NCBI GenBank assembly: GCA_965202585.1
Contig: OZ241831.1
Coordinates: 41,602,001 to 41,666,000 of the forward strand
Direction of reading: 5' to 3'
Length of the DNA: 64,000 bases
Source of the DNA: Thalia democratica
Taxonomy: Eukaryota
Shown: positions 9,013 to 48,600 of the stretch, in pieces
How the letters are laid out: each line of letters begins with the position of its first letter
How positions within the stretch are numbered: the stretch's first letter is position 1
Translations under genes and position numbers: made by a program
Notes under the pieces: generated by a model
What the model saw: the letters and a program-made list of their open reading frames with translations, nothing else
Told to the model about the DNA's origin: nothing
Database searches by the model: none

Positions 9013-9093
9013 CTCAGTTTAAAATTGAATCTTAATTTTTTTGTTAAAGCAAAAATCCGCTTCAAAAGTAGTTGAAGTTGTCCAAGCAAAAAC

Positions 9094-10366: not shown

Positions 10367-12215
10367 AAATGTACAATAAAAACAGCACTAGATTTTTGTT
10401 TGTGTTTCTTTTTTATTTAGTTATGTTTTGTTAAGTATTCACTCCCCAAGATTCATATAATACTTGGTAATAACACTAGTAAATTTAAAAAAATAAATAT
10501 AATTATTTCAATTTTTAACTTAAGTTTTTAATAAAAAAAAAGTGTAATTTATTTTTTAGATACGCTAGAAGTAACCCGATCATATCTAACCTAGTCATTT
10601 CTAACACGATATAACCCGATCATTTCTAACTCGATCAGTAAAAACTATCTTATTTTAATCAGGATTTAATTTAAAAGCAAACTAATCTTAAAAAAATTAT
10701 TCTTATTTTAAGACATAGAAATAAATAGTTTATATAGTGTTACTTGAAATTTGTTCTTGGTATAAGTTTTATTTTAACTTATTTTTTTCTTTATATCAAC
10801 CTGCTTCAATGGAAGTTGTTTTGGTTGAACAAAATTTTCTAAACTGTTTGACGCTTTTTTAAATTGTTTGTTGGATTCTTATAGTAATCTGTTATAGTTA
10901 TGCTTAAGTTGGATCTTCTTGTCAGTTACATAGTTAGAATTTTTTCAAGGCAAGTAAATTATAATAATTAGACCTGCAAAAATTTAATATTCAGATATCC
11001 AACTATTACAGTTTATAAGTTATGCTGAAGTCTAGCGCTGCGGTTGTTTACAAATCTGTTACTTTTTTATAGTCAATTAGCTTTTATTTTCAGCTTAAGA
11101 ATTTGCACAAGTTGTTCTATAACTTGCACAGGCCTACTTAGATAACCAAACTTATACAGAAGTTAGGCGAACTTGAACATTTTTCTTTTATTTCTAATCT
11201 TCGTATACCATAAAAAGTAACTGAAATTTTAAAGAAAGTTTACTAGACGAGATTTGATCTCATTTTTTAAATTTAAATTTCAAAGATTTAAAAAAAGTTT
11301 GTTGGTTCCCAGCAAAATTTACTGCTCTAAAGTTGAACTGTCTCTTAAAATAAACTGAAAATGTGCCAATTATGTAGTCAACAATACTACCTAAAACTTA
11401 AAACTTTTTGAATATGCCGCTTTTATAACAAGTTTTTACAAAAATGAATGTTAATTACGACTGATACTTAAAAAACTTCAACTTCAGAAAAACAAACTTA
11501 TTTGAATTAAGTTTTTTGAAACTTTACCAGAACATTGTACTAAAAATATTCTTTTAATTATCGAATGTTGGCTAAAAATTAATTTTAAAGGTAAAATACG
11601 TTTATACAATTAATTTTAGAAATAAAAATTCTATAAAACCAACAACTAATAAACTAAATTAAGACATCAGCCTTTGTTTTATCTTTTTATAGTAAGTCTT
11701 TAATTACAATTTATTAAAAGCATAGTAAAACAACAAATACATTGTTACATTAGCGGTTATTATACACAATGGAAGTTAAAAGTGAAAACAAATATGTTAA
11801 ATTACTAACTATTTAATTAAAGTAAACGTTTTCCGTATTCGTAAATTAAATCTTTGTTTTTGTTGCATAAATTATTTTATTATTCTTGAAAGTCACAAGC
11901 TAAACTTTAAAAATATGATGATTGACCTAAGAAACTATTTGATATTTTTCTAATTAAGTTAATATTATTCAAGACATTGGTAAACTTCGGCCTATGGTAA
12001 AAACGTAGAAAGCAAACTAAAAACTGCTGCAGGTACTTTTAAGCTTAAACTGTACTTGTTTGAAACAACTTAGAAAAAGTTAAAAACCAAAACTTATTGA
12101 TAGTTATTACTCAACTATTGTTTTTTGTTTAAATACCATTTATTTAGATAGTTATATTTATTATGATTAAAATATTATTGAAATAACTGCAGTCCCGCAG
12201 GACTTATTTTTATAC

Positions 12216-12869
12216 TAGGGGTACGCAACGTTTTTCAATATACGGGCCGGATCCGGAAAAATTTAGTATTTTGCGGGCCGGAGCTTTTCGAGTTAGTGAT
12301 TTACTGGATCCAGCCGAATAACGAGTTTTTAGATTTGAATCCGACTAGATACTTATTTTAAGTCGAGATACGGATCTGGTTGGATTCTAATGTAAATAAA
12401 AGTTTCGGATCCGGCCGTAATCTAATTTTATGGATACAGTTGATCACTTTTTTACATCCTTCAAATTGAAAAAACTTTCTCAAGTCTGACAACTTAAGAT
12501 GTAGATTGAGACATGTCAGATGTTTAAATAATGTCTATAAACAGAATTGACATTGTAATTGACAAAGGTACGTATTTAAAATAAATAAAAAAACACTTTG
12601 CTTGGGATATTTTACTAAAAGATATTCTAACTAATTTAGAGAAATATTATGACAAAATAGTGTGTTTATTAGTACACATTATTTTATAAAGTAGTTTTTT
12701 AGCATATTTTTTAAGTCAAATTCTTACAGTGATTTGTAAAAATATGATACAAAGTTATATACAAATGTTGTAGTATTGACCCTTTGCAGGCCTGTAAATT
12801 TCCTAGCGGGCCAGTAATTTTCATTTGCGGGTCGGATCCGGCCCGAGGGCCGTACGTTACCCACCCCTA
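12216..12869. mobile_element. Non-autonomous hAT element with intact TSD and nested inserts
   Basis: TIRs TAGGGGTACGCAACG / CGTTACCCACCCCTA, perfect 8-bp TSD TTTTATAC on both sides, subterminal GCGGGCCGGATCCGG motifs. Confidence 0.85.
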
Positions 12870-13023
12870 TTTTATACGCTGCGGCATGCGAGCAACTTTT
12901 TAAGGAAACTCGGCTTGTTACTTGTAAAAGACTACTGACACCTGTTTGTATACTAGTTTTTAATTTAAACATATTTTTTTAATTATTCAAATCAATCAAA
13001 TATTACGACAAATATCTCTACTA

Positions 13024-13090
13024 CAGGGTTTCCAAAACTTTTTTTAAAAAACCCCTTTAAAGAAGTTAAAAAAGCTATGGCCTCATCCAA
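13024..13090 (+). mobile_element. hAT MITE left-end fragment
   Basis: Starts CAGGGTTTCCAAAACTTTTTT, the same TIR family as 29292. Confidence 0.6.
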
Positions 13091-13625
13091 TAAGATTTTT
13101 CGAAAAACTACCATTAAAAACAATTAATTTTTTTTTAGCTACTTAACATCAACTTTTTGACTAGTAGTTGTAACTTAGATAAAGTATTTATGTTACTGTT
13201 AAATATAAAAAGGTAAAAAAAAGCTTCACTAACAATTCAACAACGACTGAATGTTTCGGGGAGAACCTGTAGATTAAAAGCCACTCAAGGGTTTGATCTG
13301 GACAAAGAAATGAGGCAATTTTTTACGAATGTAAGGGGTTGCTGCTAAGTAGAGCGGTAGGTTGCATTTCGACTGAAACTATGCAATATAAGACGTAACA
13401 ATTGGATAAATAGCGAACTTCGACTGAAACGATGAAAAAGATGACGTAACAATTGGAAAACTTCGTAATTTTAAAATGACACAATACTGGCAACTTTGTT
13501 CCTTGCATTACGGGAAGCGCGCTGCATTAAGCAAAACTAAGCTTTTATGCCGAAATTATTCAAGAAAATTAGCTTTCCTTTTGGGGAAAATTTACTTTTG
13601 CGCTGAAACTTCATACACTTTAACT

Positions 13626-13750
13626 GGGTAAGCTGTCAAATTTGCACGAGCGTACAAAATTGCACGAGTGCACAAAATCGCTAAAATAAACTTTTGCACG
13701 AAGACACTATGCACGAGGGAATAAAATTGCACGACAATACATTTGCACGG
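13626..13750 (+). mobile_element. Solo left arm of the TGCACG-repeat transposon family (also 35681-35805, 58146-58270)
   Basis: GGGTAAGCTGTC...GAGCGTACAAAAT matches the 2407 terminus. Confidence 0.65.
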
Positions 13751-16222
13751 GTTATTTTTTTCTTATTTAATTTATTTTTTTTATTATCACTTTTTACCCT
13801 AACGCTTACCCTCGGTCGAAGAATCGAAACGTAGATGCCTAATAAAGTTTTTCATACTGTAATGAAATCAATATTTGATTTTATTATTTTAAATAAATGA
13901 GTAAATAAGGAGTTTTTTGTTTCGACGGCGTAAAACATTCATAATTCTTAGAAATGAGTTATTTTAAACCAAAAACAATAATAAGCTTTCTGAAAACAGT
14001 TTTCCAAGTTTTTAAAACATTATTGTTAATTCGAAGAAGTTAGTTTCTTTCCAGTGCGTGTATATCGGTGTTTGTGTTTCAAATACGCGTTAGTTAGTTA
14101 AGTTTTTGTGCGTTTCGTACGCCGTCTTAAGTCACGATGATGATCAACGCAACATCAAGTTAAGTTCAAGCTAATGAAGTAAAATCTACATCGAAAAAAG
14201 TATACGTTTTCTAGTGAAGAATAAGTTACACATTGTCAAGCAACCAGAACACCTAGTCGTGTCTAAGAACATCAATCTAAACGAGTTCCTTGATCGAACA
14301 ATTCATTTGTCAAGACCATAAGTATCTTTGCATACATTTTTTTAAAATAGACTATTTGTTTATTAACTAATACAGTTCTTTCTTGAGTTTTAAAATACTA
14401 CTTGACATTAATTCATAGAGTGTTTCAATCATGACTTAGTAACAAGTTACTTTAAGTTTTGTAACTTTAGTATTGTAAGGTACTCTTAAGTAAAGCAGTC
14501 AGTTTAGCTTAAGTACTTAGAAACCATGTTTAAGACGATAAACATAACCAGTTTTATAAATATTTCTCTGTGGTTATAATACTTTACTATGTTTTCAATA
14601 ATATTTAATTCAACCTAAAACGATGTAAAAAATATTTATCATTAAGAAGTACCAATAATTGGGTTATAACTTAGCAATATTAGTTAAAAATAAAAAATAA
14701 ATACTTGTTTTAAAAAATAATGAAAACTAACAATTATACTCCAACAGCAAAAAATAAATAAAAAAGGATCAAAAAATATATATGTTTGTTAAAGACAAAA
14801 TCTAGTAATAGACCTGTTTTCAAAGGCAAACTCTTATTGTTTTGTTTTGTCGAAACCATGTTACAGGCTTCATGCAAATTTTGTAATATTATCTTTAGCG
14901 GGCCGGATTTCGTATTAATTTTGAAAAACGTTAAGCTGGCCGGTCACTTTCACTCGCGGGCCGTACGTCACTCACAACAACGGTTTGTAGTTGTCAACCA
15001 CCAATATTTGTTGGAAGATCAAAGAAATCGGCCTGGTGACAGAATACGTTTGATCTTTTTTTGTTACCAAGATGAGCTGTATCTTTGAAACAACTAATAG
15101 CAAAAAAAGATCTACCTACAGAAATAGCTAACTATGTTTTTTAATATTTAAAATACTAATTTAAAGTAAAAATACATGTTGTAGAGTTTATTCAACTTCT
15201 AAATTGTGTTTTGATATTGTTAAGTCACCAATAAAAAACTAGAATTTCTATACTTAACAATTTAAAAGTTTATCGTATTTTAATCAAAAAATAATTCTTG
15301 AACATACTGTAAGTACAAACATGAATTTTCAACATAAACATCTAATTTTACAACATGTAAAACAGCTATAACTGTATATAAAAAACTTGTTTTATTCATT
15401 TCACATTTAACAATTTATATTCTTTTTATGCTTTTATTTTATATTGTAAAAACGTGTTACAAATTTATCTAATTTTCTTTCATAATAATTTTTTAAGACA
15501 TTGTGGTTATTTCAACAAGTTAATGATTTTATTTTGCTGAACTATGATTTTTTAATTCTACTTGAAAATTACTTCTATTATGTCACAAAATTAATTATAA
15601 AAGTTATTCCTAGTTGCTTATTTTACACAACTAACTGCACGAAAACTTTTCTCTATTGTTATTTTACTTAATAAGTAATATTATATATATTAAAACCTTA
15701 GAAATCAATCATTAAAAAAATAAGTAAAAGGACTTTTTAAATAATAACAAGTATTATGCAGAAATTTGAGGCATGATTGGTTTAATTTTTTTTTTTTAAA
15801 CAAAAAAGTTAAATCGATTTTAAATAACACTTATCAACTACTTGTTTTTATAATTGTTGTTTGTCACTTATTTTATATATTTATCGTATTTTGTGTTTTT
15901 ATTTTTATACGTTTGCTTATCTTAGTTAAATTACTAATCAATCTATCTAAAAACATGTAATTATAAACTGTTAATTGGTATTAATTGAACTTTTTCTCAT
16001 GAAACCTCCAACTGTTTATTTACTCAAAATTTATCTTCAAAATTAGTTGCTAACATTAGATATTGATAATTTTTAGCTGAAATCAATTTTACTTGTTTGT
16101 TTAAATAAAAATGTTTTTGAACAAATCATGTTTCAAACTTCTTTTTAGTATATGTATTACAAAAAAGTTATATAGTAGCAAGTATAAATAATTATTTTAT
16201 GTTTATTTTATAATTTGTACGC

Positions 16223-17178
16223 TTATTTTTTTTCGGTCTCTAGTGACGTATTTCTCGATAAGCAGTTTTTTGAATTACACTCACAATCAAAATCACGAAA
16301 ATACCCTTCTCCGTACCAAATGAAGAGTTGCTCACTAGCTCTGATAACTTTTTTGCTGATGATAAAGTTCCTAGGAATTCCATTTATCAGAGCGTACTCT
16401 GTCCTGCAGTTCAACTTTTCTTCGCAATCGTGGTTGATGTACCTGGTATGGTTGCCCATTGCGCCCGCGTCAATATCAAAATTCGTGCATGTGCTGAAAT
16501 AGTAGTTGGTAGCCCCTTTATTCTCACGCCACCTTTTAGTCTTTTCTTCTTTTGAAATAAGCTCGCCTGTATACTCTCCTATTATTGAGTCTGAAAATCA
16601 ACAAATAATAAGTTTAATATCCAAGCTAGTAGTTTAATTTAAGAATTATTTAGTCAAAATTTTCATTATAACAAAAAAAAGTTGTACATTGAAAAAAAAG
16701 TTAAACAATGAAACTAACTTGCTGGTATAGCATGCTTAGCGAACAGTCCACGGCCCATATCACCACTAAGATTGTCCACATAAAAATGTTTTTCAGGATC
16801 GTCGAGGCAGTCATGATTGAACTTTTTCAAACTATCCAGTTCAATAAAAGAAGCTACATGTTTCATCTCATCCAAATAAGTACCGCTTCCAATCACGAGG
16901 TGGTTCGTCCAAACATGATGCTTCTCTGTATTGAAATGATAGTAAGGATCAAAAACGTCGTCAGGCCCTTCCTTGAATGTCCTTTTAACTTCGAATTTTC
17001 CCTCCAAAGCAATTTTTTTCCACTTTTGCCTGCTTGACGATCGTATTTTAATGCTGAGTGGTGCATATTTTTTCAACGTATTCCTGATTGGAACACTTCT
17101 TATAACGGTCTTCCTTGCTGTCTGCTTTTTGTAGCTTTTTATTCTTGATTGCTTACTGGAACTTGTTTTTACTGGCAT
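16223..17178 (-). CDS. SET + post-SET gene B copy 1, 275 aa; exons 17178-16719 and 16590-16223
   Basis: Phase-1 intron 16718-16591 (GTTAGT...GATTTTCAG) at the same position as in gene A; 460+368 nt in frame. Motifs MGRGLF, IIGEYTGELI, IDAGAMGNHTRYINHDC, EQLFIWYG, CECNSKNC. Confidence 0.9.
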
Positions 17179-18869
17179 TTTATAGTTGAGAAATTTAGCA
17201 AATAAATGACTATAAATATGTTAGATAAGTAATTTAAGAAACTTATACTGTTGTAATATATTTTATATCCGAAGTATGGATCATAAGTTTATCTAAAGCT
17301 TGAAAATTTCGAATGATACTTCAACCTTTTTCATATAAACCAGGCAAAACAAATGAGTTATTAGATTAAAATCTAAAACATTATACATAAAGAGTAATAT
17401 AACAGATTTTATAAATAAAACAAGTTATTATTAAATTGAGTTTAAGAAAATTCTGAATTTTAAAATGTTATTATACCATACCTGATTCCCACATCAACAG
17501 TTTTTTTTTAAGTGTTAAATAAACAAATTAAAATAGCAACTATTATCAAATCCCTGTAAAAGATGATTAATAATTAATTAAGAAAATGAAGGTAGAGATG
17601 GATACCGAACTCAGATACAAAAACCAAGTCGTAAGAAATGCAAGAAATGATAATAAACTATCAAGCTAGGAAAAGAGAATTGTCAATTAGAATATAAAAT
17701 GCAATTGAAGCTGACAAAAAATGAATAAGTTAAAGCAGATAATGAAAAATAAACAGCAGGTGTAATCAGTGTTGAAAGAAAAAAGTATACTGTGAATCAT
17801 TGCTAGTGAAACTGCAAAGCATGAAAAAAATCTGTTATCTAATGTTAACAAAATTGAGAAGTTTCAAAGGAATTTCAATTTTGAAACTCAGGATGTATCA
17901 ATTGAAAGATAATGAGAAATCTAAAAATACCAACAAAGTATTACTAGAAAATAGTATTACTGTTCAACAAATTTATTTAATATTATTATTAATTTAATAA
18001 GGTGTTGGAAGGAACAAAAAAGAAAGTTAATAAAATAATAAACATTTATAAAATTAAATTTATTAAATATAACAACTTTAAACAAAATGACTGTTCACTT
18101 GACTTAATATTCATACACTCCCAAAAGATAAATCTAACAAAAAGTATAACTACATAACCTGAAACTTTATCTATACTAAGTTAACTTAACATTAACCTTA
18201 ACAACTGAAAACAACTATTTTTATGTTCGCATGCGTGTAATTGAACATTTGTGGTTTGTGGTGTGACCTCAAAACTCGAGACAACACTTTTGGGCATAGT
18301 ATTTTGAGAGAATTTAGGGTTTTATAACCCGCGGCGAGTTCAAAAGACTTTTTTGCTTAAATAATTTTCAAATGTTTAGGCTAACCCAGAACATCGAGAC
18401 CTTGTGATGAATTTCCCGTGTATATTTTTTTAGGTCTTGTTTTTCTAAAAGCGAAATGGTGCAATTCCGTGGATTTGAACTTACCAGGAACAAAAGAACT
18501 AGAAAAAACTTACCAGGAATAAAAGAAGGCAGGAATATAAATCTAAAAATAGTAAAGAAAACATTTAATGCTAAAGTTTAGTATAAATGAGTTTAAAATT
18601 AAACTATGTTTCTCAATAACAGAGTTTTTATTTGTTCTCTTTCTAACAATAAAATAAACAAAGAATACTTTTCAAGTGAGTCATATGATTTTTTAAATTG
18701 TTATTTTTGAGATACCTTTTAATTTTTGTTATGATCAATATAAAGCTTTTGATAGTAATAGTGGTATTCTAATTACAGAACTTAATTTTGATATTGAGAC
18801 TGGACAAACTTTTGTTAGTTCACAATACATAACTAGTAACGTTAATCCATTTTAGTTTATAGTTAATAA

Positions 18870-19130
18870 AACTGAAAAACTAAAAATATTACAGGATAAA
18901 ACAAATCTTCCTAAACAACAGTATTTAACAGTTACTTGCATATAAAAGATTTTTGAAAAGCTTAGCAGTAACATAATAGAATCGCTGGAAACAACTAGTG
19001 TTGATATTAAAGTAGCCTTCAGAACAGATTTAGTTGGAAACTATTTCTCATTGAAAGATCGAATGGATAAATTTTACAGGAGTTGCATCGTTTACAAGTT
19101 TCAATGTCCGGGTGAAATGAATACCCAATT
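18870..19130 (+). mobile_element. Penelope-like fragment (RT-endonuclease linker into GIY-YIG start); copies at about 40590-40862 and 63055-63327
   Basis: Translates to ..EKLSSNIIESLETTSVDIKVAFRTDLVGNYFSLKDRMDKFYRSCIVYKFQCPG, the YFSLKD...S..VYKF.C.G signature, truncated before YIG. Confidence 0.75.
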
Positions 19131-21400
19131 CAAGTATAACTCTATAATAAAAAAATTTAAAAAAAGAGTTAAAGGGAAAAAATGTACCAGATAAAATATT
19201 TCTAAAGTTTAACTTAAGGTAAGTTCTAAACCTAGGATATCTAAAGCCGTGTTTACATTTACAAAATAAGTAATAAGCTATTCAAAACTATTTGCAAAAA
19301 CAGTTTTAAAAGTCAAGTAAAGGTAAAAGATAATAAAAACTGAGAAATAAATTAAAAAATCAAAACTAGTCTAAAAAACATACTTTGAAACAAACATTCT
19401 AATTAACATAAATCAAAACACTCTTTAAGAAAAATTAAATGTATTTTTTTAAATTTAAAGAGTTATCAATGAAATATGCAAAAAACACAAAAAGAAAACT
19501 ACTTCCTACTTAAAATTTAAATAAATAAAGTTGTTTTCAAAGCTAATTGATATAGTTTATAAACATAACACAAGATTTGCTTATTAGTAAACAGACATGT
19601 CAGTAACATAAATCAATCAAAAATAATGCAGTAATATAAAATACAGCAGAAACAGTTTCATCTGGTATGATGCGATAAATGTTGAAGTATATAACGTTAC
19701 AAAAATTTAAACTCAAAGAAAGCCAGTAGTGAGGATTAGATATCAGTCAAATTCTTAAAAAAGGCAACATTGTATCTCTAGTAACTAAAAAAAACTAATT
19801 AGTCAGGTATCCTGTGAAAGTAAGTACCTAAATAGTTTAAAAGTAGCAAAAGTAATACAAATACTCCAGTCAGGCTCAAAAAAGATAACAGGAAAATATA
19901 GTATATAACAACTTCCATTTTATCTAATTTAAACAAATCTACAATAAAAACTTATACAATAGTTCCAAAACAGTTTGTAAATTTTTTTACTAAATACAAT
20001 GACCAATTTTTTTTTCAGATCAGGCTATTCTACCACCTTAGCTTTGAATGAATTAATTGAAGGAGTTCTATAACAATTTATTATAAGTAAAGCTTAATGA
20101 TCAGTTTTACTAGATGTAAGTAAACTCTTAAATCTTGATAGTGTTAGTAGAGAAGTTTTGTTTAAAACTTAGATTTCTATAGCAGTGGTCTTAAAGCTAA
20201 TCAAGTTTTGTGTACACTAACCTGAAAAAAATAATTGGTGTGTCCCAAGATATAATTTTTAAAAGCGCCGGTAGTGGTGGGTCTTCGTAAAACTTTTTAA
20301 TAACATGTTTCTCTCTAAAGCGATATCTCAAGTTATGTTGTGATACTATTATTTATGTTAATGAGATATGTTTTCATGGAACCCACTAGCAGCGCTAATA
20401 TATCATAATTAAGTTTATTTCTACATGCAAACCTTTAAATAACTCAAGCTGACTCTTGTTATTTGATCCAAATTTTGATGTGCTTTTCTATTTATTTTGC
20501 CTTTCTTTCACAATGAGATTTTAGTTATGTGGTTTTGTCTTACATAAATATCAGTTGAACACATCTTCGCAATCACTACAAATCCCCAGTAGAGTTCTTT
20601 TAAAATATTTTATTTAACATTAACTACATAATTAAACTAATTCTATGTCTTTAACTTTTTGTGTATTACCTACTTCAAAAAATGATATTCAAACAGAAAA
20701 ATAACACATGAAAAAGGAGTTAAAAACAGATAAATTCTAAATTATGTATATGTTGTTGCTCTCCGTACAGTTGCTGTAGACATTGTTTCTTTCATAGACT
20801 AAATTTTTGCACTTCAAGAAGTTCAGGGTTGTATATGATTGTCACTTCTTTCTGGTAAAAAAACTAAAACCTGAAAATTGAAAAATGTTTTGTTGTGAAG
20901 TTTATTACATATAACTAGTACATACTATACTATAAGTTTTAACTAGGCTTAGCATTTAATATAGAGTTTTTCACTCTTTCAAGTAAAAAAGCAATTCTGA
21001 TTGACCTACAACCAGTTTGTATTTCTTTAAGCTAGTTTAAAATAAGAAAATGTTTATCTATGTTGGCTAAAAACTCAATATCAAATTAAAAATCATATGT
21101 GAATAAAACAGTAATTAACTCAACAAATACTTAATTGAAAAAATAGTTTAACATTCAGAAAAATATCAAACTAGTCTAAATTTAAATTAGCTTTTACTAA
21201 ATGCTACAAACTGTTACTCTATATGCTACTTATGCAAACTTTGGATGGTATTAGTGAGGATATTTTATACTAATGAACAAATACACAACTTAACAATAGT
21301 ATAAAGGACATCATGTTTAAAAAATACTTTAAAGGGAGACAAATCCATAACAAAGATTTTAAATCTGAGATAATATATTTTAAGAAATGTAAGCCTAGAC

Positions 21401-21470: not shown

Positions 21471-22836
21471 TTGGTTTTAGTGATATGCAAAAAATATTAT
21501 GGTTCTAGTTTTATTAACAATTTTAGGTTACTTTTATTCAGTTTGTTGTTTTAAAATGATTTTAGCTACACATAGAATACCTAAAAAACTTATAAACATT
21601 TATTGGAATCAAAATTTCATTGACTAATATAGTTTAGTCTTAATAAACCATGTAATATTTAAACAGTTAGTAGGTTTAATTTACTGTTTTGTAGATAATA
21701 AATTATAGTACTAAATAACTTTTAAACCTAGCTTACAATACCTACAAACAGAATTCAAAAAGAAGAGAGCGGTTTGTTAAAAAAATAAAATTAAGAAATT
21801 ATTTATATCTAAGTGTACTTCGACATAACTAGTTTTTTTTAAATTTTAGTTTAAATTAAGTAAATAATGAATTGCCACGGTTTGGATTTGCAGCGTTCTT
21901 TTGCCTTTTCATGCAAGCTGTCTGTTGAAAATGGTATCTGTTCTTGAGTCTTAGTACGTACTTTACGAGAGTGCGTACCTGCTCTATGTATGTAGTGTAG
22001 CTGGTAAACTTTATATACAATGAGCAAGATTAATACAAGGATAAATAAGTGCATGTGATGAAAAAAAGAATAGTTTGACTCTCTTGAGGTAGCCAAAATA
22101 CAATATTTTCAACAGCAACATTTGAGCATCATACGCGTATACATAGTGTTACACTATTAAGAGAGGCACTTGTAGTGTGTCAGAAAGCGAGCTGACGACC
22201 TAGTCAGCTTAGGGATTTTACAATGTAAAGCTACAACGAATAAATCCCTAGACGTCTAAGCGGGTAGACGTCGTGAAGGCGGGTTGTGTGTTAGTGTGTT
22301 TGCAGGCATACAGATTATAGCTTGAGTCGACTTGGCCGTCGACTCGAGCTAGAGTCGAAAGACCGCAGCTAGGCGATCAAAGGTCGTATAGCAGACCTCA
22401 TTGAATAAGCACGAAGGGAACGTAAAGCGAGAGCAAGGCACGTACCGTCCTAAGCAAGCCGTTAAGCATAAAAGCCGCACTCTCGCAAGGCAGTATATGA
22501 ACGAGCTCTGACATGATTCAGCCCAGTTGAAAGTACGTTTGAGTGCAAAGATGAATTGATTAAGGAATGCATTTCTAGAAGTGAAGCTTCGGACGGGCGA
22601 CTGAAGCAGAGTAGGCGAGGTACTAGAAAATGCGAAGGTGTAGCACTCAAAATGTAACATGTAAAAAAGCGGCATAATCTCATGGTCGCTTTCAAAGTCA
22701 GAGGTCAGTTGAAGCGAAATGTTTTGGAAGGGAAGCAGGAGCTTCGAGAAAACATTTGTAAAACAGCGGGAGGTCTGTTTTTTCGAAAAGTTGTTGAAAA
22801 TGAATTTTTGGGTTGTGAGAAGGGTGGAGAGAATAA

Positions 22837-22940
22837 AGAAAGAAAAGTTGGAAAAATTTTGAGCAAAAAAGCCGTCCGAATTCGCCCGCGGGCGAATTCG
22901 GACGGCTTTTTTGCTCAAAATTTTTCCAACTTTTCTTTCT
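22837..22940. repeat. 104-bp perfect spacerless palindrome (copy at 45302-45405)
   Basis: 52-bp arms centred at 22888/22889 in GAATTCGCCCG|CGGGCGAATTC. The ORF track shows SKKAVRIRPRANSDGFFAQNFSNFSF on both strands. Confidence 0.97.
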
Positions 22941-23140
22941 ATAATTTTTCAAAGGTGTTCGACAAAAGTCGAACGCCTTTTTTTTACCCAAAATTTTTTT
23001 TGGCTACCTCAAGAGAGTCAGAGTTTTTTGCCTAGTACTATATATTTTTCAAAGGTGTTCGACGAAAGTCGGATGCCTTTTTTTTACCCAAAAATTTTTT
23101 AGGCTGCCTCAAGAGAGTCAGAGTTTTTTCCCTAGTAATG
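22941..23140 (+). repeat. Two ~100-bp direct repeats, each with a 13-bp hairpin (copy at 45406-45605)
   Basis: TTTTTCAAAGGTGTTCGAC at 22945 and 23045; both units end ...CCTAGTA. Confidence 0.92.
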
Positions 23141-26100
23141 ATTATTTTATCAATTTCACTGATGTCTTAAATTTTGAACGTTGCTGCCGAAAGGTTAGCA
23201 CCATTATTTTTTATATATAATTTTGATAAAAAATGTTAGAGTTTTTAAAATTACAACTATCAATAGCCTTATTAGAGAAATGTAGAAAATATTTTTTACT
23301 TTTGATACTTATAATAAATTAAGATTTAATTTATAAAGATATAATCAAAACAATGATAGTAAAAAGGCTTGTTTGTTATTTGAAATATGTAAGATAAAAA
23401 TATTACAAATTAAACTTTATATTTCAGGTTAGAACTTTTATATTTCAAATTGAAAATAAGTTTTAATGTTCTTAACAAAATTACGCATTGAAATTTTCAA
23501 CATTTTCACGTTTCTAAGACATGCTTTATTTTTTAATAAAGTTTTAAACTAATGGGAATTTACTTACAAACGAGAACTATAAAAGTAAGCATGCCAAAAA
23601 AAAAAACTTAAGCACGTGTACATATATTACTTAACCTGATAAGATAATAAATCCAATTGTACAAACAAAAACAAACTAAACTCGTATCTGTGCCAACGAA
23701 CAACTATGTCAAAAAGAAAATTAAAAGTGTTGTTTTATAATTAGAATTTTTTTTTGTATCTGACACTTAATGAAGCAAACTGTTTAATTCAACGTTGATA
23801 CTCTTTTTAGTACTTGTGTGCAGTTTTCTATATAGTTTTCTATACAATAAACAAATTTTTAGGTAGCAGGCATTTTGATTAATTTTGTTAAACGTTTGTA
23901 ATTCATTTAATTTGTTCTTAAAAATAAAAGAATATGGTTTAGTTTGTTAAATAAAACGACAAAAACCGATAAAACATTTAGTGTAGTTGAGAAACAAGTA
24001 GCTTATGTATAAAAACGATTTATGTGATTCAATCATGTAATTTAGTTTAGTTAACATAAGGCATATTTAAGTATAGACAGCTATATGTAACTATACTGAT
24101 TTTGTTTGAGTCAACTATCATAGACAAGTTCTCAATTAATGAAAAATAAAGATACTTCACATTTTTTTATACATGCGCAAGTACTTGGTAAAAACTTTAA
24201 ATAACTAAACAAAAAGCTTGCGAAACATAGGCTACTCCCACAACTGATTTCTGAATACAATCTAGTTTCGTTTAGTTTTCTTTTATCGCTCGTTTTATTT
24301 ATTTAATTATAAAGTTTTAAGTTTTAAACTTAAAACTTATCGGCTCGTTAACCATTGTAAAACCATGTGGTGTACGACTCGAAAACCGAAAAGTTCTTTC
24401 GAATACCAGGTCTTTAGAAGAAACTTTTTAATGCTTTTTTTGCGGTTCAACGAACAATAAAAAATTGAAAAGGGAAGGTTAAAAAAAAGCTACTAGACGA
24501 AGTGGTCTAACGTTTTCACGCGTTGTCAAACTCTTGTAATCAACATATTTTTCTCTATACTTAGCTAGACGCTCAAAAATGTAACGGCGACTTTTGCGAG
24601 ACTAAGTGTCTGTTTCCATTATATGATCATTAAAAACTTCACTTTCAGCTAAGTTTACTTATAGAATATGGTTTTATAAAAGCATGTCTTGGTAGTTAAT
24701 TATTTTGATTTAAGTAAAGTACTTGACAAATACAGGTATTTCTCATAAAACTATTCGCAGATTTTTGACAATTACGGACGACGCAAGTTGATTTTACGAG
24801 AAAAGCTATTGAAAACAGAAAAAAAGTCTAATAAAAGAGATGAGTACAAATTATATTGAAAATAAGAGGTATACTCATTTAGACATTTTGCAATAGCGTT
24901 ATGAACGCTTTTCAACAATCTATCTGGAGTATTTTAAAGTTATGTAATTTAACATAATCTAATGAACGTAAAGATAACTTATGAAAAATATAAAAATCAA
25001 CAAACGTGCGAAGATTTAAAACTGTAAACTTTGAAAAACCGTCTTTTTTTACGATCAAAGTTAAACACAATATTTTATTTAAACAAAGCGTCATGCGACT
25101 AAAATAAAGCAAATTTATAATTTAAACAAAAGAGTCGTTAATAATATAGCTTTGGTAGTTACAGCACAACACCTATGACAGAACTACTCTTATATATCTT
25201 ATACTACTTAAACAACGATTACTTGTCGAATTTTTTCATGATATTAAGGTACTTCATAAAGAGAAACATATTACAAAATAGAAGCAAATTGATTTAGTGA
25301 CATTTAATTTTATACTCGTTTAATCAAAACTAACATTTAAACGGTTAAATATGTAGTTGCTATCTTGCATAGTTGGTCATTTCATGCAGTTAGTTTTTGT
25401 ATATGAACTGAAGAAAGACCTAAATAAAAATATCAGAAGCGTTATCTTTTACAAAGCTTGAGCTTTATTTAATACGCAAGTGAAAACTTCCAACAAGAAA
25501 CAAAATCAAATACTAAAACTATTAAGAAAGGTTGATTTAGAAATACATTTATTTTAAGAAAACATCTGTTTAATGCTCATTCCGAAGTCAATACACTGCG
25601 AAGAACAGTCCTGGACAAAAAATTTATGTAACTGTGGCGTATTAGTTGATAACCGAAAGGTTTTTCGTACACCAGGTCCTTAGATCAAACTTTTATTGAG
25701 TGTTTCTATCGACGTTCAACAAACTGACTGTACATACGAACTAACTTCCAAGCATGTATAAAAATTTTGATATATATATGGCAAGTTTCCTTCAAGTTGC
25801 GTAAACAAGTCGAACATTTGTGTAATATATTTATTAAACGGTAATAAAAACTATGCAAGCTGTGTTAGTATAAGTGTCACTATATAATATTTCAAGAAAA
25901 TTGCAGCTATACTCTGATAAATCACTTATTCGGGTAAAAATAGTTTTTTCTCAAAAACTCGATTTCATTTTATCTTTACAAGAATTCTGGACATTATGAA
26001 AAAGTTGCTTTTAAATAATGGTGATGCTTTAAAAAATATATATACTTAAGTATATTATCCAATAATCTATTGTGTGTGTCTTAAGATATTTCTCTTGATA

Positions 26101-29100: not shown

Positions 29101-29291
29101 ACTTTAAAATGTATCAGATGTCAAATTATAGATGGCTACAATTCTTTTTTGTAAGATAATGAAAGTAAAGTTCTGACTTTTTAAAGCTACCTAGATAAGG
29201 TTATGAGTTTTTATGTTTAGTTTAAAATCTTCACCAACTCACTTTTAAATCTATATAAATTTTCTAAAGCTTTGATGTTATTGTTATACAC

Positions 29292-29543
29292 CAGGGTTTC
29301 CCAAACTTTTTTACTAATGGCCCCCTTCAACATATAGGTTACTCAAAAACTACGAAAAAATACACATATGAGCTTTTTTTTTGCTCTTCAACTGCAACTC
29401 CAGAATATCTAGTGTAAGTTTCAAGTTATAGCCTCATGGCCATGGCCCCCCTGTGGCTCCTTTACTGCTCATGGCCCCCCCTCTTCCCCCTTTGCTGCTC
29501 ATGGCCCCCTAGGGGGCCACTTTGCCAACTTTGGGAAACCCTG
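29292..29543. mobile_element. Complete 252-bp hAT MITE
   Basis: TIR CAGGGTTTCCCAAA at both ends; 8-bp TSD TTATACAC / TTATACAT. Confidence 0.88.
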
Positions 29544-34302: not shown

Positions 34303-34953
34303 TAGGGGTACGCAACGTTTTTCTATATACGGGCCGGATCCGGAAAAAATTATTCTTTAGCGGGCCGGAGCATTTTGAGTTAGTGATTTACCGGATCCAG
34401 CCGAATAATGAGTTTTTAGATTTGAATCCGACTAGATACTTATTTTAAGTCGAGATACGGATCTGGTCGGATTCTTATGTAAATAAAAGTTTCGGATCCG
34501 GCCATAATTTAATTTTATGGATACAGTTGATCACTTTTTTACATCCTTCAAATTGAAAAAACTTTCTCAAGTCTGACAACTTAAGATGTAGATTGAGACA
34601 TGTCAGAATTTTAAATAATGTCTATAAGTAGAATTGACATTGTAATTGACAAAGGTACGTATGTAAAAAAAAAAACACTTTGCTTGGGATATTTCACTAA
34701 AAGATATTCTAACTAATTTAGAGCAACACAAAATATTAGGACAAAATAGTGTGTTTATTAGTACACATTATTTTATAAAGTAGTTTTTTATCATATTTTT
34801 TTAGTCAAATTCTTACAGTGATTTGTAAAAATATGATACAAAGTTTTATACAAGTTTTGTAATATTGACCCTTTGCAGGCCTGTAAATTTTCTAGCGGGC
34901 CAGTAATTTTCATTTGCGGGCCGGATCCGGCCCGAGGGCCGTACGTTAGCCAC
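34303..34953. mobile_element. Copy of the 12216 hAT element with its right end and TSD deleted
   Basis: After CGTTAGCCAC the sequence jumps to TTTTTAAGG; CCCTA and the TSD are missing. Same state at 56768-57418. Confidence 0.8.
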
Positions 34954-44540: not shown

Positions 44541-45605
44541 TGACTCTCTTGAGGTAGCCAAAATACAATATTTTCAACAGCAACATTTGAGCATCATACG
44601 CGTATACATAGTGTTACACTATTAAGAGAGGCACTTGTAGTGTGTCAGAAAGCGAGCTGACGACCTAGTCAGCTTAGGGATTTTACAATGTAAAGCTACA
44701 ACGAATAAATCCCTAGACGTCTAAGCGGGTAGACGTCGTGAAGGCGGGTTGTGTGTTAGTGTGTTTGCAGGCATACAGATTATAGCTTGAGTCGACTTGG
44801 CCGTCGACTCGAGCTAGAGTCGAAAGACCGCAGCTAGGCGATCAAAGGTCGTATAGCAGACCTCATTGAATAAGCACGAAGGGAACGTAAAGCGAGAGCA
44901 AGGCACGTACCGTCCTAAGCAAGCCGTTAAGCATAAAAGCCGCACTCTCGCAAGGCAGTATATGAACGAGCTCTGACATGATTCAGCCCAGTTGAAAGTA
45001 CGTTTGAGTGCAAAGATGAATTGATTAAGGAATGCATTTCTAGAAGTGAAGCTTCGGACGGGCGACTGAAGCAGAGTAGGCGAGGTACTAGAAAATGCGA
45101 AGGTGTAGCACTCAAAATGTAACATGTAAAAAAGCGGCATAATCTCATGGTCGCTTTCAAAGTCAGAGGTCAGTTGAAGCGAAATGTTTTGGAAGGGAAG
45201 CAGGAGCTTCGAGAAAACATTTGTAAAACAGCGGGAGGTCTGTTTTTTCGAAAAGTTGTTGAAAATGAATTTTTGGGTTGTGAGAAGGGTGGAGAGAATA
45301 AAGAAAGAAAAGTTGGAAAAATTTTGAGCAAAAAAGCCGTCCGAATTCGCCCGCGGGCGAATTCGGACGGCTTTTTTGCTCAAAATTTTTCCAACTTTTC
45401 TTTCTATAATTTTTCAAAGGTGTTCGACAAAAGTCGAACGCCTTTTTTTTACCCAAAATTTTTTTTGGCTACCTCAAGAGAGTCAGAGTTTTTTGCCTAG
45501 TACTATATATTTTTCAAAGGTGTTCGACGAAAGTCGGATGCCTTTTTTTTACCCAAAAATTTTTTAGGCTGCCTCAAGAGAGTCAGAGTTTTTTCCCTAG
45601 TAATG
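44541..45605. other. Second copy of the unclassified structured element
   Basis: 22076-23140 shifted by 22465; ORF-track entries are identical. Confidence 0.7.
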
Positions 45606-48600
45606 ATTATTTTATCAATTTCACTGATGTCTTAAATTTTGAACGTTGCTGCCGAAAGGTTAGCACCATTATTTTTTATATATAATTTTGATAAAAAATG
45701 TTAGAGTTTTTAAAATTACAACTATCAATAGCCTTATTAGAGAAATGTAGAAAATATTTTTTACTTTTGATACTTATAATAAATTAAGATTTAATTTATA
45801 AAGATATAATCAAAACAATGATAGTAAAAAGGCTTGTTTGTTATTTGAAATATGTAAGATAAAAATATTACAAATTAAACTTTATATTTCAGGTTAGAAC
45901 TTTTATATTTCAAATTGAAAATAAGTTTTAATGTTCTTAACAAAATTACGCATTGAAATTTTCAACATTTTCACGTTTCTAAGACATGCTTTATTTTTTA
46001 ATAAAGTTTTAAACTAATGGGAATTTACTTACAAACGAGAACTATAAAAGTAAGCATGCCAAAAAAAAAAACTTAAGCACGTGTACATATATTACTTAAC
46101 CTGATAAGATAATAAATCCAATTGTACAAACAAAAACAAACTAAACTCGTATCTGTGCCAACGAACAACTATGTCAAAAAGAAAATTAAAAGTGTTGTTT
46201 TATAATTAGAATTTTTTTTTGTATCTGACACTTAATGAAGCAAACTGTTTAATTCAACGTTGATACTCTTTTTAGTACTTGTGTGCAGTTTTCTATATAG
46301 TTTTCTATACAATAAACAAATTTTTAGGTAGCAGGCATTTTGATTAATTTTGTTAAACGTTTGTAATTCATTTAATTTGTTCTTAAAAATAAAAGAATAT
46401 GGTTTAGTTTGTTAAATAAAACGACAAAAACCGATAAAACATTTAGTGTAGTTGAGAAACAAGTAGCTTATGTATAAAAACGATTTATGTGATTCAATCA
46501 TGTAATTTAGTTTAGTTAACATAAGGCATATTTAAGTATAGACAGCTATATGTAACTATACTGATTTTGTTTGAGTCAACTATCATAGACAAGTTCTCAA
46601 TTAATGAAAAATAAAGATACTTCACATTTTTTTATACATGCGCAAGTACTTGGTAAAAACTTTAAATAACTAAACAAAAAGCTTGCGAAACATAGGCTAC
46701 TCCCACAACTGATTTCTGAATACAATCTAGTTTCGTTTAGTTTTCTTTTATCGCTCGTTTTATTTATTTAATTATAAAGTTTTAAGTTTTAAACTTAAAA
46801 CTTATCGGCTCGTTAACCATTGTAAAACCATGTGGTGTACGACTCGAAAACCGAAAAGTTCTTTCGAATACCAGGTCTTTAGAAGAAACTTTTTAATGCT
46901 TTTTTTGCGGTTCAACGAACAATAAAAAATTGAAAAGGGAAGGTTAAAAAAAAGCTACTAGACGAAGTGGTCTAACGTTTTCACGCGTTGTCAAACTCTT
47001 GTAATCAACATATTTTTCTCTATACTTAGCTAGACGCTCAAAAATGTAACGGCGACTTTTGCGAGACTAAGTGTCTGTTTCCATTATATGATCATTAAAA
47101 ACTTCACTTTCAGCTAAGTTTACTTATAGAATATGGTTTTATAAAAGCATGTCTTGGTAGTTAATTATTTTGATTTAAGTAAAGTACTTGACAAATACAG
47201 GTATTTCTCATAAAACTATTCGCAGATTTTTGACAATTACGGACGACGCAAGTTGATTTTACGAGAAAAGCTATTGAAAACAGAAAAAAAGTCTAATAAA
47301 AGAGATGAGTACAAATTATATTGAAAATAAGAGGTATACTCATTTAGACATTTTGCAATAGCGTTATGAACGCTTTTCAACAATCTATCTGGAGTATTTT
47401 AAAGTTATGTAATTTAACATAATCTAATGAACGTAAAGATAACTTATGAAAAATATAAAAATCAACAAACGTGCGAAGATTTAAAACTGTAAACTTTGAA
47501 AAACCGTCTTTTTTTACGATCAAAGTTAAACACAATATTTTATTTAAACAAAGCGTCATGCGACTAAAATAAAGCAAATTTATAATTTAAACAAAAGAGT
47601 CGTTAATAATATAGCTTTGGTAGTTACAGCACAACACCTATGACAGAACTACTCTTATATATCTTATACTACTTAAACAACGATTACTTGTCGAATTTTT
47701 TCATGATATTAAGGTACTTCATAAAGAGAAACATATTACAAAATAGAAGCAAATTGATTTAGTGACATTTAATTTTATACTCGTTTAATCAAAACTAACA
47801 TTTAAACGGTTAAATATGTAGTTGCTATCTTGCATAGTTGGTCATTTCATGCAGTTAGTTTTTGTATATGAACTGAAGAAAGACCTAAATAAAAATATCA
47901 GAAGCGTTATCTTTTACAAAGCTTGAGCTTTATTTAATACGCAAGTGAAAACTTCCAACAAGAAACAAAATCAAATACTAAAACTATTAAGAAAGGTTGA
48001 TTTAGAAATACATTTATTTTAAGAAAACATCTGTTTAATGCTCATTCCGAAGTCAATACACTGCGAAGAACAGTCCTGGACAAAAAATTTATGTAACTGT
48101 GGCGTATTAGTTGATAACCGAAAGGTTTTTCGTACACCAGGTCCTTAGATCAAACTTTTATTGAGTGTTTCTATCGACGTTCAACAAACTGACTGTACAT
48201 ACGAACTAACTTCCAAGCATGTATAAAAATTTTGATATATATATGGCAAGTTTCCTTCAAGTTGCGTAAACAAGTCGAACATTTGTGTAATATATTTATT
48301 AAACGGTAATAAAAACTATGCAAGCTGTGTTAGTATAAGTGTCACTATATAATATTTCAAGAAAATTGCAGCTATACTCTGATAAATCACTTATTCGGGT
48401 AAAAATAGTTTTTTCTCAAAAACTCGATTTCATTTTATCTTTACAAGAATTCTGGACATTATGAAAAAGTTGCTTTTAAATAATGGTGATGCTTTAAAAA
48501 ATATATATACTTAAGTATATTATCCAATAATCTATTGTGTGTGTCTTAAGATATTTCTCTTGATAAAGATGCCCTCATAAATATCTTATTTTTAATACAA

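What the first reader, a model, noticed from the sequence alone, without database searches (positions are those of the whole stretch)
22140..22760. ~600-nt densely base-paired island resembling a large unclassified structured RNA (or ssDNA fold)
Seen: roughly 45-55% GC in hand-counted lines against strongly AT-rich flanks, with no credible ORF. Stems include 22190-96/22203-09, 22210-18/22242-50, 22251-58/22265-72, a 14-bp stem 22318-31/22338-51 with a G-U pair, GTC-GAAA-GAC 22354-63, 22381-85/22394-98 and 22427-33/22480-86. A nested multi-branch domain has 22535-46/22643-55 enclosing 22569-78/22623-33, which encloses 22586-90/22603-07. Another stem is 22717-25/22749-57. Purine-rich loops and G-U pairs favour the + strand. 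It does not fit rRNA, tRNA, snRNA, SRP, RNase P or group I/II intron cores as I know them. Inference: a novel ncRNA, ribozyme-bearing retroelement, viral UTR relic or rolling-circle element core, co-amplified once per SET repeat unit.
Basis: partly seen in the sequence, partly recalled or inferred. Interest (0 to 1): 0.8.

Follow-up and report, generated by a model that had tools for sequence, protein, structure and literature searches.

The report
Stray ribosomal-DNA spacer fragment, duplicated
The GC-rich, hairpin-dense island is real. It is best read as a stray piece of ribosomal-DNA spacer, bracketed by inverted 22-nt pieces of the 28S rRNA gene and copied passively with a 22.5-kb duplication, and not as a new class of structured RNA.

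Summary
Excess folding is confined to 22201-22500 (z about -5.6). 22501-22800 is no better than shuffles. Both strands fold equally well, so the stems are mostly perfect Watson-Crick palindromes. Nothing favours the + strand.

No Rfam family matches. The only second copy (44205-44825) is 100% identical, so covariation cannot be tested.

New evidence points to rDNA ancestry:
- The island lies between inverted copies of a 22-nt piece of eukaryotic 28S rRNA (22076-22098 sense; 22998-23020 and 23098-23120 antisense). This is the stretch where an R2-like retrotransposon sits in metagenome contig L003.
- 22108-22165 matches, at 88% over 58 nt with the first 33 identical, the point 470-530 nt upstream of 18S in rDNA contig L048. 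There AT-rich spacer turns into GC-rich external transcribed spacer, which is where a Pol I promoter and start site would be.
- Downstream lie a 124-nt palindrome and two hairpin-plus-T8 units.

Best reading (about 0.5): an rDNA-spacer orphon, or mini Pol I unit, carried along by a 22,465-bp tandem duplication. A non-autonomous relative of R2-type elements (about 0.22) is not excluded. Interest is modest.

The parts
22076..22098 (+). 28S rRNA fragment in rRNA-sense orientation. 22 nt are identical to LSU model positions 2266-2287 and carry the lineage-specific G variant. This is the left arm of the 23-nt perfect inverted repeat.
   Evidence: Searches show the inverted repeat. Searches show that the pattern hits genuine 28S genes in about 30 metagenome contigs. 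One search gives the Rfam LSU alignment of L048, and the extent of identity.
22108..22165 (+). Pol I core-promoter / transcription-start-like block. It is homologous to the IGS-to-5'ETS boundary of rDNA contig L048.
   Evidence: 88% identity over 58 nt, E 3e-14, with the first 33 nt identical. In L048 the match lies 470-530 nt upstream of 18S on the rRNA-sense strand, where AT-rich spacer becomes GC-rich ETS.
22166..22790 (+). GC-rich (46%), purine-rich (60%) body with no relative anywhere.
   Evidence: Composition is and the stems. z is -3.93/-3.96. It has no similarity to the L048 or L036 ETS, no Rfam hit and no protein homolog.
22190..22351 (.). Cluster of perfect hairpins: 7 bp at 22190-22209, 9 bp at 22210-22250, 8 bp at 22251-22272, and 14 bp with one G-U at 22318-22351. 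This is the only part of the island with significant excess folding.
   Evidence: verifies the stems. One search gives z -5.2/-3.9 for 22140-22450, and one search gives z -5.6 for 22201-22500.
22827..22950 (.). 124-nt palindrome with 62-nt arms, 94% complementary, and no spacer between the arms.
   Evidence: I1; 98% over 110 nt; z -14.4. The only Rfam 'evalue' hits of the region are hairpin-driven matches far below threshold at this spot.
22939..23153 (+). 100-bp tandem repeat, 2.2 copies at 89% identity. Each unit holds a 13-bp hairpin, a T8 run, a further T run and an antisense 28S fragment.
   Evidence: (D1).
22951..22988 (+). Terminator-like hairpin followed by T8 (+ strand only), first copy.
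23051..23088 (+). Terminator-like hairpin followed by T8 (+ strand only), second copy.
22998..23020 (-). 28S rRNA fragment in antisense orientation (LSU model 2266-2287). This is the right arm of the inverted repeat.
23098..23120 (-). Second antisense 28S fragment, with one substitution, in the second 100-bp unit.
44541..45618 (+). Second, identical copy of the whole composite (offset +22,465) in the next 22.5-kb tandem unit.

Best explanation
The island is a displaced piece of ribosomal-DNA spacer, an rDNA 'orphon' laid out like a miniature Pol I transcription unit.

Reading left to right on the + strand it has:
- a 22-nt copy of the 28S rRNA insertion hot spot;
- ten bases later, a roughly 58-nt block homologous to the promoter/start-site region of a related organism's rDNA;
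- about 625 nt of GC- and purine-rich sequence of the kind found in 5' external transcribed spacers;
- a T6 run, a 124-nt palindrome, and two 100-bp units, each with a hairpin-plus-T8 terminator-like signal and an antisense copy of the same 28S piece.

Shown: the 28S identity, the homology of the promoter-region block, the composition, the stems, and the passive duplication.

Inferred:
- The block is a Pol I promoter.
- The body is spacer-type RNA.
- If transcribed at all, transcription runs rightwards from about 22140 to the T-rich hairpins and gives a short-lived ETS-like RNA.
- The locus has no function of its own and was carried along when the 22.5-kb unit holding a SET-domain gene duplicated.

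On this reading the dense pairing reflects spacer-type composition plus a handful of perfect DNA palindromes. It is not an evolved RNA architecture.
For: (1) A 19-nt pattern from the inverted repeat hit 58 metagenome contigs. About 30 of them are genuine eukaryotic 28S genes with the motif in full rRNA context. Rfam places it at LSU model positions 2266-2287. L048/L036 28S and all window copies share a G where the eukaryotic consensus has A.

(2) Independently, window 22108-22165 matches L048 5504-5447 at 88% over 58 nt, with the first 33 nt identical. L048 is an rDNA unit (LSU, 5.8S, SSU). The match lies 470-530 nt upstream of 18S on the sense strand, at the AT-rich IGS to GC-rich ETS switch.

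(3) In the native rDNA of a related organism (L036/L029; rRNA plus ITS 87.5% identical to L048), tandem 52-nt repeats each hold the same 28S fragment in sense orientation. They sit just upstream of the ETS. This is the same order as in the window, fragment then promoter region.

(4) Body composition (A .32, G .28; purines 60%) resembles true ETSs (L048 57%, L036 61%). Its folding z (-3.9) is in the range of true ETSs (-2.5, -3.5).

(5) The + strand-specific hairpin-T8 signals lie downstream of the body.

(6) No ORF, protein family or Rfam family matches. The two copies are identical and lie inside a 99.8% tandem duplication.
Against: - The body (22166-22800) does not align with the L048 ETS, although the promoter-like block is nearly identical (local alignment score equal to shuffles). 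However, the L048 and L036 ETSs do not align with each other either.
- No 18S or any other rRNA follows, so this is not a working rDNA unit.
- Promoter identity rests on position in a single contig (L048). No transcription data exist.
- The island folds equally well on both strands, whereas real ETSs are asymmetric.
- The inverted orientation of the 28S fragments and the zero-spacer palindrome are not explained by simple displacement of a spacer.
- The source organism and its own rDNA are unknown. The nearest relatives of its SET genes are only unnamed marine-catalogue, JGI and ENA sequences.
Confidence: 0.5

Rival explanations
1. The island is a non-autonomous relative or remnant of an rDNA-specific (R2-type) retrotransposon. 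On this view the 28S fragment is the 'leader' left on R2-type RNA after self-cleavage inside 28S, the structured body is a 5'-UTR-like RNA (possibly with a ribozyme), and the locus is an ectopic or rearranged insertion. The inverted leader-plus-short-unit repeats on the right would be further 5'-end fragments.
For: - All fragment-type contexts start at LSU model position 2266/2267. That is 13-14 nt before the insertion point defined by the R2-like element in L003. They end at 2287-2293, next to L003's 5' junction with its 13-bp target duplication.
- L003 carries a 1109-aa ORF with a reverse-transcriptase domain (E 1.7e-31).
- PMC3774820 reports R2 ribozymes that cleave 9-36 nt upstream of the insertion site inside 28S, one class at 13 nt.
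- The same fragment occurs in a dispersed noncoding repeat family in other metagenomes (L015 and others).
- The 5' UTR of L003 is about as structured (z -3.9) as the island.
Against: - The window has no reverse transcriptase or any other ORF.
- There is no 3' junction with downstream 28S in direct orientation; the right-hand fragments are inverted.
- There is no similarity to L003 or to any other insertion in the fetched loci.
- An HDV-like descriptor found no fold. It also failed on the positive control L003, and Rfam is blind to L003's 5' end, so this test is uninformative.
- The block right after the fragment has its only homolog upstream of 18S in L048, where no 28S leader precedes it.
- The only copies are the two made by the segmental duplication.
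Confidence: 0.22
2. The island is a functional, previously unclassified structured non-coding RNA gene or ribozyme transcribed from the + strand.
For: - Whole-island folding energy beats all shuffles.
- There are several perfect hairpins with 6-nt loops and a GAAA-loop hairpin.
- It matches no known family.
- A promoter-like block lies upstream and T-run/hairpin signals lie downstream.
- There are zero differences between the two copies, where about 3 would be expected at 0.2% divergence. This is weak evidence.
Against: - z is equal on both strands.
- Half of the island is no better than shuffles.
- The stems are perfect palindromes with almost no G-U pairs.
- No homolog turned up in plasmid, phage, viral, prokaryote-genome or metagenome searches, or through spurious-ORF protein searches. 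There is thus no covariation or conservation evidence at all.
- The context is rDNA debris inside a very recent duplication.
Confidence: 0.1
3. The island is a cut-and-paste DNA transposon or MITE whose 23-nt terminal inverted repeats mimic its 28S target.
For: A perfect 23-nt inverted repeat brackets about 900 bp, with subterminal tandem repeats and an internal palindrome.
Against: - No target-site duplication flanks the repeat, and the similarity of the arms does not extend beyond the 28S fragment and A-rich context.
- The right arm lies inside a 100-bp tandem unit and not at an element end.
- No transposase is present.
- No other copies or empty site exist in the window.
Confidence: 0.06

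Closest known systems
rDNA orphons and IGS/ETS-derived repeats outside the rDNA array (for example the IGS-derived satellite described in PMC2679016; spacer remnants in PMC10319768)
   Same: Non-coding rDNA spacer sequence sits away from rRNA genes. It includes a promoter-region homolog, tandem subrepeats and terminator-like signals, it was amplified by duplication, and no function is needed to explain it.
   Different: - The piece is bracketed by inverted copies of a 22-nt 28S coding fragment.
- Its body has no detectable homolog in the one related ETS available.
- There are only two copies, made by a 22.5-kb segmental duplication. It is not a satellite.
Spacer-promoter transcription units of rDNA intergenic spacers (promoter duplicate, ETS-like leader, promoter-proximal terminator). 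This comparison rests on my own knowledge of Xenopus, Drosophila and mouse rDNA.
   Same: The order is promoter-like block, then a few hundred nt of spacer-type sequence, then T-rich terminator-like elements. The same short motif recurs upstream of the promoter and at the terminators.
   Different: - It is not located in an rDNA array.
- The upstream and downstream motif copies are in opposite orientation.
- The motif is a 28S coding fragment.
- Transcription was not shown.
R2 non-LTR retrotransposons and their internally deleted non-autonomous derivatives (SIDEs). The ribozyme literature is PMC3774820.
   Same: - The 28S stretch involved is the one where the R2-like element of L003 is inserted.
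- The fragment limits fit a self-cleaved 28S leader plus a target duplication.
- The non-coding RNA-like body is highly structured.
   Different: - There is no reverse transcriptase.
- There is no direct-orientation 28S flank or 3' junction.
- No ribozyme fold was found.
- There is no similarity to L003.
MITE or foldback-type DNA elements
   Same: Perfect short inverted repeats bracket about 900 bp, with an internal palindrome and subterminal repeats.
   Different: - There is no target-site duplication.
- No dispersed copies were seen.
- The arms are rRNA-gene fragments, and one lies inside a tandem repeat unit.

Membership tests
rDNA spacer-derived sequence (promoter/5'ETS orphon) | Sequence homology to the promoter/transcription-start region of an rDNA unit | tested here: met
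   22108-22165 matches L048 5504-5447 at 88% over 58 nt, with 33 nt identical. The match lies 470-530 nt upstream of 18S on the sense strand. This rests on one contig, and promoter function is inferred from position.
rDNA spacer-derived sequence (promoter/5'ETS orphon) | Homology of the body to the 5' ETS of a relative | tested here: inconclusive
   There is no alignment to the L048 or L036 ETS. However, those two ETSs do not align with each other either, so a negative result is expected at this distance.
rDNA spacer-derived sequence (promoter/5'ETS orphon) | Presence of rRNA-gene-derived sequence of the host lineage | tested here: met
   Three copies of LSU model positions 2266-2287 carry the same G variant as L048/L036 28S, where the Rfam consensus has A.
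Functional rDNA unit | 18S/5.8S/28S genes downstream of the promoter and ETS | tested here: not met
   No rRNA match in the whole window at gathering thresholds, and none in 21800-23300 at E<=10.
R2-type retrotransposon / SIDE | Reverse-transcriptase ORF (autonomous), or 5' and 3' ends homologous to an autonomous R2 (SIDE) | tested here: not met
   There is no ORF with a family hit. There is no similarity to the R2-like element L003 or to the other loci. The R2 elements of the source genome itself could not be examined.
R2-type retrotransposon / SIDE | Insertion between direct-orientation 28S flanks at the R2 site | tested here: not met
   The left fragment spans the site intact. The right fragments are inverted.
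R2-type retrotransposon / SIDE | HDV-like self-cleaving ribozyme at the 5' end | tested here: inconclusive
   A custom double-pseudoknot descriptor gave 0 solutions in the window and also 0 in the positive control L003. Rfam finds nothing in either.
TIR DNA transposon / MITE | Terminal inverted repeats flanked by a target-site duplication | tested here: not met
   A 23-nt perfect inverted repeat is present, but there is no duplication at its outer edges, and the right arm lies inside a tandem unit.
TIR DNA transposon / MITE | Multiple dispersed copies in the genome | not testable with these tools
   Only 64 kb of the source genome is available. Its two copies come from the segmental duplication.
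Known structured RNA families (rRNA, RNase P/MRP, SRP, group I/II introns, small ribozymes, riboswitches) | Covariance-model match | tested here: not met
   There were 0 matches at gathering scores in the window. At E<=10 there was nothing inside 22140-22760, only matches far below threshold on the palindrome at 22780-23130.
Conserved structured ncRNA (any) | Compensatory base changes in diverged homologs | not testable with these tools
   The only other copy is 100% identical. No homolog was found elsewhere.

The most novel reading that the evidence does not exclude
In this lineage of AT-rich marine eukaryotes, the 22-28-nt piece of 28S that spans the R2-type insertion hot spot is a recurrent, functional module of rDNA spacers and rDNA-derived units. 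It is placed next to Pol I promoters (L036/L029, window left end) and next to T-rich terminators (window right end). It could work as a decoy or landing pad for R2-type elements, or as the binding site of a Pol I pausing/termination factor. On this reading the window locus is a live Pol I-driven mini-gene outside the rDNA array, and its roughly 640-nt structured RNA has a role of its own.
Probability: 0.12. Interest if true: 0.65.

Novelty: new member of a known kind. Interest (0 to 1): 0.3.

Why it matters
The main value is corrective. A striking 'structured RNA island' in an AT-rich genome turns out to carry recognisable ribosomal-DNA ancestry. Its apparent architecture comes largely from a few perfect palindromes plus spacer-type composition, so it should not be counted as a new RNA class without covariation or expression data.

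Two side points could interest rDNA and retrotransposon specialists:
- A promoter-region homolog and 28S hot-spot fragments lie outside any rRNA gene, inside a very young 22.5-kb duplication.
- In three unrelated contexts (this window, the native IGS of a related organism, and a dispersed repeat family in other metagenomes), the 28S fragment starts at the same base, 13-14 nt before the R2-type insertion point. That is what a self-cleaved R2-type RNA leader would look like. If it holds up, such fragments would be footprints of R2-type activity and a route by which rDNA-specific elements seed spacer repeats.

Tried and rejected
- Rfam at gathering thresholds over the whole window, and at E<=10 over 21800-23300, gave nothing in the island.
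- tRNA/tmRNA scan: none.
- BLAST of 22060-23150 against plasmids and phages: no match.
- Exact-pattern scans of IMG/VR with a 30-mer of the 14-bp hairpin, with the 28S-fragment pattern and with the promoter-like block: 0 hits. The promoter-like block against GTDB genomes: 0 hits.
- Using the spurious 189-aa ORF as a handle to find related loci among 5.8 billion proteins: no hit. Pfam on island ORFs: nothing.
- Exact look-up of window SET ORFs in public assemblies: not on record.
- Search for an empty site or a diverged paralogous copy within the window: none.
- Alternative genetic codes as an explanation for the scarcity of ORFs: uninformative in AT-rich DNA.
- Local alignment and shared-k-mer comparison of the island body with the L048 and L036 ETSs: no signal.
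- HDV-like ribozyme descriptor: no solution, but it also failed on the R2-like control, so it is uninformative.
- Organism identification through SET-protein homologs: only unnamed JGI, marine-catalogue and ENA sequences.
- Literature searches found no precedent for 28S hot-spot fragments in IGS repeats.
- Considered and rejected:
  - A group I intron at this 28S site, because the flanks are not split and there is no model hit.
  - A bacterial or vector-like insert, because there is no plasmid or phage match and the count of 6-bp palindromes is about what chance gives.
  - A parvovirus-like hairpin telomere, because no viral genes are nearby.
Full report
**1. What is there**

The window is AT-rich (27.5% GC) and gene-poor. 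Its only recognisable genes are SET-domain genes (Pfam SET 5.8e-13 for 10025-10366).

Positions 22140-22760 are 45.7% GC and 59.6% purine on the + strand. The flanks are 27% and 23.5% GC. Eight are perfect Watson-Crick, one has a single G-U, and two need a one-base bulge.

The longest ORF is 189 aa, starts with TTG, lies on the minus strand at 22349-22918, and runs into a palindrome. It has no family hit and no homolog.

A self-comparison of the window shows a tandem unit, 20054-41535 = 42514-64000, at 99.8% identity (37 mismatches, 1 gap). It also shows an older partial unit at 10848-20045 (about 96%) that does not include the island. The island occurs twice, 22,465 bp apart, and the two copies are identical over 1501 nt. 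It also means the window holds no diverged copy for a covariation test.

**2. Is the structure more than chance?**

Only in part.
- Whole island: z = -4.75 (+) and -4.47 (-), 100 dinucleotide shuffles each (the tool's own 20-shuffle runs gave -4.39 and -4.20).
- Split in halves: 22140-22450 gives -5.2/-3.9, and 22450-22760 gives -0.4/-0.9.
- In 300-nt tiles over 42 kb the background is -0.2 +/- 1.8.

The signal therefore comes from a cluster of perfect hairpins at 22190-22351. The 'nested multi-branch domain' at 22535-22655 is not supported.

The two strands are equivalent (-3.93 against -3.96 for 22166-22790). Real transcribed spacers and an R2-like 5' UTR from related contigs are clearly asymmetric: L048 ETS -2.45/-1.73, L036 ETS -3.49/-0.49, L003 5' UTR -3.91/-1.30. 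The + strand folds to a lower absolute energy only because it is G+U rich, and its shuffles do the same.

**3. Known RNA families**

Rfam gives no match at gathering thresholds in the window. At E<=10 it gives nothing inside the island, only sub-threshold hairpin matches on the palindrome. There are no tRNAs.

**4. The context that changes the reading**

*Repeat architecture.* The island lies between a perfect 23-nt inverted repeat, 22076-22098 and 22998-23020. A third, slightly diverged copy lies at 23098-23120. The right-hand copies sit inside a 100-bp tandem repeat (22939-23153, 2.2 copies). Each unit also carries a 13-bp hairpin followed by T8 on the + strand.

*The repeat is a 28S fragment.* A 19-nt pattern from this repeat was scanned against JGI metagenome contigs and hit 58 contigs. 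About thirty of them are genuine eukaryotic 28S rRNA genes with the motif in full rRNA context. Rfam places it at LSU model positions 2266-2287. The 28S of contigs L048 and L036 and all three window copies share a G where the eukaryotic consensus has A. The 'terminal inverted repeat' is thus a fragment of 28S rRNA of this lineage.

*This stretch of 28S is an insertion hot spot.* In contig L003 a 4.6-kb element interrupts 28S exactly here. It has a 1109-aa ORF with a reverse-transcriptase domain (Pfam RVT_1, 1.7e-31) and a 13-bp target duplication. Three further contigs (L038, L052, L060) break off from 28S a few bases away.

*An independent match to rDNA.* Contig L048 was fetched only because of the 28S motif, yet it also matches window 22108-22165 at 88% over 58 nt, with the first 33 nt identical. 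L048 is an rDNA unit with LSU, 5.8S and SSU on the minus strand. The match is on the rRNA-sense strand, 470-530 nt upstream of 18S, at the point where very AT-rich intergenic spacer switches to GC- and purine-rich 5' ETS. That is the expected place of the Pol I core promoter and start site.

The window has the same layout. AT-rich DNA is followed by the 28S fragment, then ten bases, the shared block, and about 625 nt of GC/purine-rich sequence.

*A parallel in native rDNA.* L036/L029 come from an organism whose rRNA plus ITS is 87.5% identical to L048 over 3 kb. In its native rDNA, four to five tandem 52-nt repeats each contain the 28S fragment (model 2266-2293) in sense orientation, directly upstream of the ETS. 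A 5S gene lies further upstream in the spacer. The order fragment-then-promoter-region is thus seen in genuine rDNA of this group.

**5. What the body is**

The body (22166-22790) has no relative. It does not align with the ETS of L048 or L036, and local alignment scores equal those of shuffles. It is absent from all 60 fetched loci, from plasmids and phages, from the viral and prokaryote collections, and from protein space.

The ETSs of L048 and L036 do not align with each other either, so this negative result is weak. In composition and folding z the body falls within the range of those ETSs.

**6. Best explanation (confidence about 0.5)**

The locus is a displaced rDNA-spacer composite, an orphon laid out as a mini Pol I unit. 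Its order is 28S-fragment element, promoter/start-like block, spacer-type structured sequence, T-run, palindrome, and then two hairpin-T8 units with antisense 28S-fragment elements. It was duplicated passively with the 22.5-kb unit.

Shown: the homologies, the layout and the duplication. Inferred: promoter function, the direction and extent of any transcript, and the lack of independent function.

**7. Main rival (about 0.22): a remnant or non-autonomous relative of an R2-type element**

Three contexts carry the 28S fragment outside a 28S gene: the window, the L036/L029 IGS repeats, and a dispersed roughly 760-bp noncoding repeat family in Ga0209145/Ga0209783 contigs. In all three the fragment starts at model position 2266/2267. 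That is 13-14 nt before the insertion point defined by L003. It ends between 2287 and 2293, next to L003's 5' junction.

PMC3774820 reports that many R2 ribozymes self-cleave inside 28S, 9-36 nt upstream of the insertion site, including a class at 13 nt. The fragments could therefore be the 28S leader retained on such RNA.

One caveat applies. The search pattern itself began at 2266, so fragments with a later start could not be found. Only the absence of any upstream extension is informative.

Against this rival:
- There is no reverse transcriptase, no 3' junction, and no direct-orientation flanks.
- There is no similarity to L003.
- The block after the fragment has its only homolog upstream of 18S in L048, where no leader precedes it.
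- A ribozyme fold could not be tested. My descriptor and Rfam both fail on the positive control L003.

**8. Other rivals**

- A functional novel ncRNA (about 0.1) has no positive evidence beyond folding energy. That energy is strand-symmetric and local.
- A MITE-type DNA transposon (about 0.06) lacks a target-site duplication. Its right 'end' lies inside a tandem unit.

**9. Organism**

It is not identified. SET-gene relatives occur only in unnamed JGI transcript contigs (72-78% nt identity, L002), in marine-catalogue entries, and in ENA metagenome contigs (93% nt identity, L001). A marine planktonic eukaryote is my guess from those sources, not a result.

**10. Novelty and interest**

rDNA orphons and spacer-derived repeats are known. 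This is a new example with an unusual feature, the inverted 28S hot-spot fragments. Interest is 0.3. The most novel reading not excluded is given separately.

These were generic 28S hot-spot and rDNA promoter consensus strings, a homing-endonuclease site, and part of a ribozyme of a human virus satellite. Every sequence statement above rests on tool output. I stopped once I noticed, and I used only an abstract helix-length descriptor for the ribozyme test.

Noticed in passing
window 20054-41535 and 42514-64000; older partial unit 10848-20045: There is a very young tandem segmental duplication with a 22,465-bp period, at 99.8% identity (37 mismatches, 1 gap). An older partial copy at about 96% is also present. 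Each unit carries one two-exon SET-domain gene (for example 37930-38908 on the minus strand, with an intron of about 125 nt inferred from transcript contig L002).
   Followed up: partly
window 9094-10366 (+): A further SET-domain gene lies outside the repeat units. Its N-terminal exon holds 8.6 copies of a 27-nt (9-aa) tandem repeat at 9240-9472 and 2.6 copies of a 36-nt repeat at 9138-9229. This accounts for the second GC-rich spot of the window (42% GC in 9001-10000).
   Followed up: partly
window 12301-12900 and its copy at 34201-34800: This is a second region with folding better than shuffles (z -3.7 and -4.5 in 300-nt tiles). No long inverted repeat explains it, and it was not studied further.
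   Followed up: partly
window 29441-29509; 29279-29485 against 58-297: There is a C-rich 30-nt tandem repeat (2.3 copies). Next to it is a roughly 180-nt stretch that matches the start of the window in inverted orientation at 76% identity.
   Followed up: no
L003:144-4740 (Ga0256846_1002138): An R2-like non-LTR retrotransposon is inserted in 28S at the hot spot. It has an uninterrupted 1109-aa ORF with a reverse-transcriptase domain and a 13-bp target duplication. The first bases of its 5' end resemble the 28S sequence a little further downstream.
   Followed up: partly
L015:864-1626, and homologous stretches in L006, L019, L020, L027, L035, L037, L040, L047, L049, L050, L054: A dispersed noncoding repeat family of 300-770 bp occurs in metagenomes Ga0209145, Ga0209783 and JGI26670J51741. 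It carries two or three copies of the same 28S fragment, each with a hairpin, about 67 nt apart, and ends in a (GACG/GACA)n tail. It looks like a SINE-like element built around 28S hot-spot fragments.
   Followed up: partly
L029:1-240 and L036:3440-3545; L029:760-880: In native rDNA of an organism related to L048, 52-nt tandem repeats each contain a 28-nt 28S fragment and lie immediately upstream of the 5' ETS. A 5S rRNA-like gene lies in the same intergenic spacer.
   Followed up: partly
L038, L052, L060 (28S flank ends about 10 nt upstream of the motif); L060:5531-6118: Further contigs have 169 nt of 28S around the hot spot, and 68 nt of 18S, embedded in ORF-free sequence with 125-nt tandem repeats. 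L039 has rRNA genes in a scrambled and inverted arrangement.
   Followed up: no
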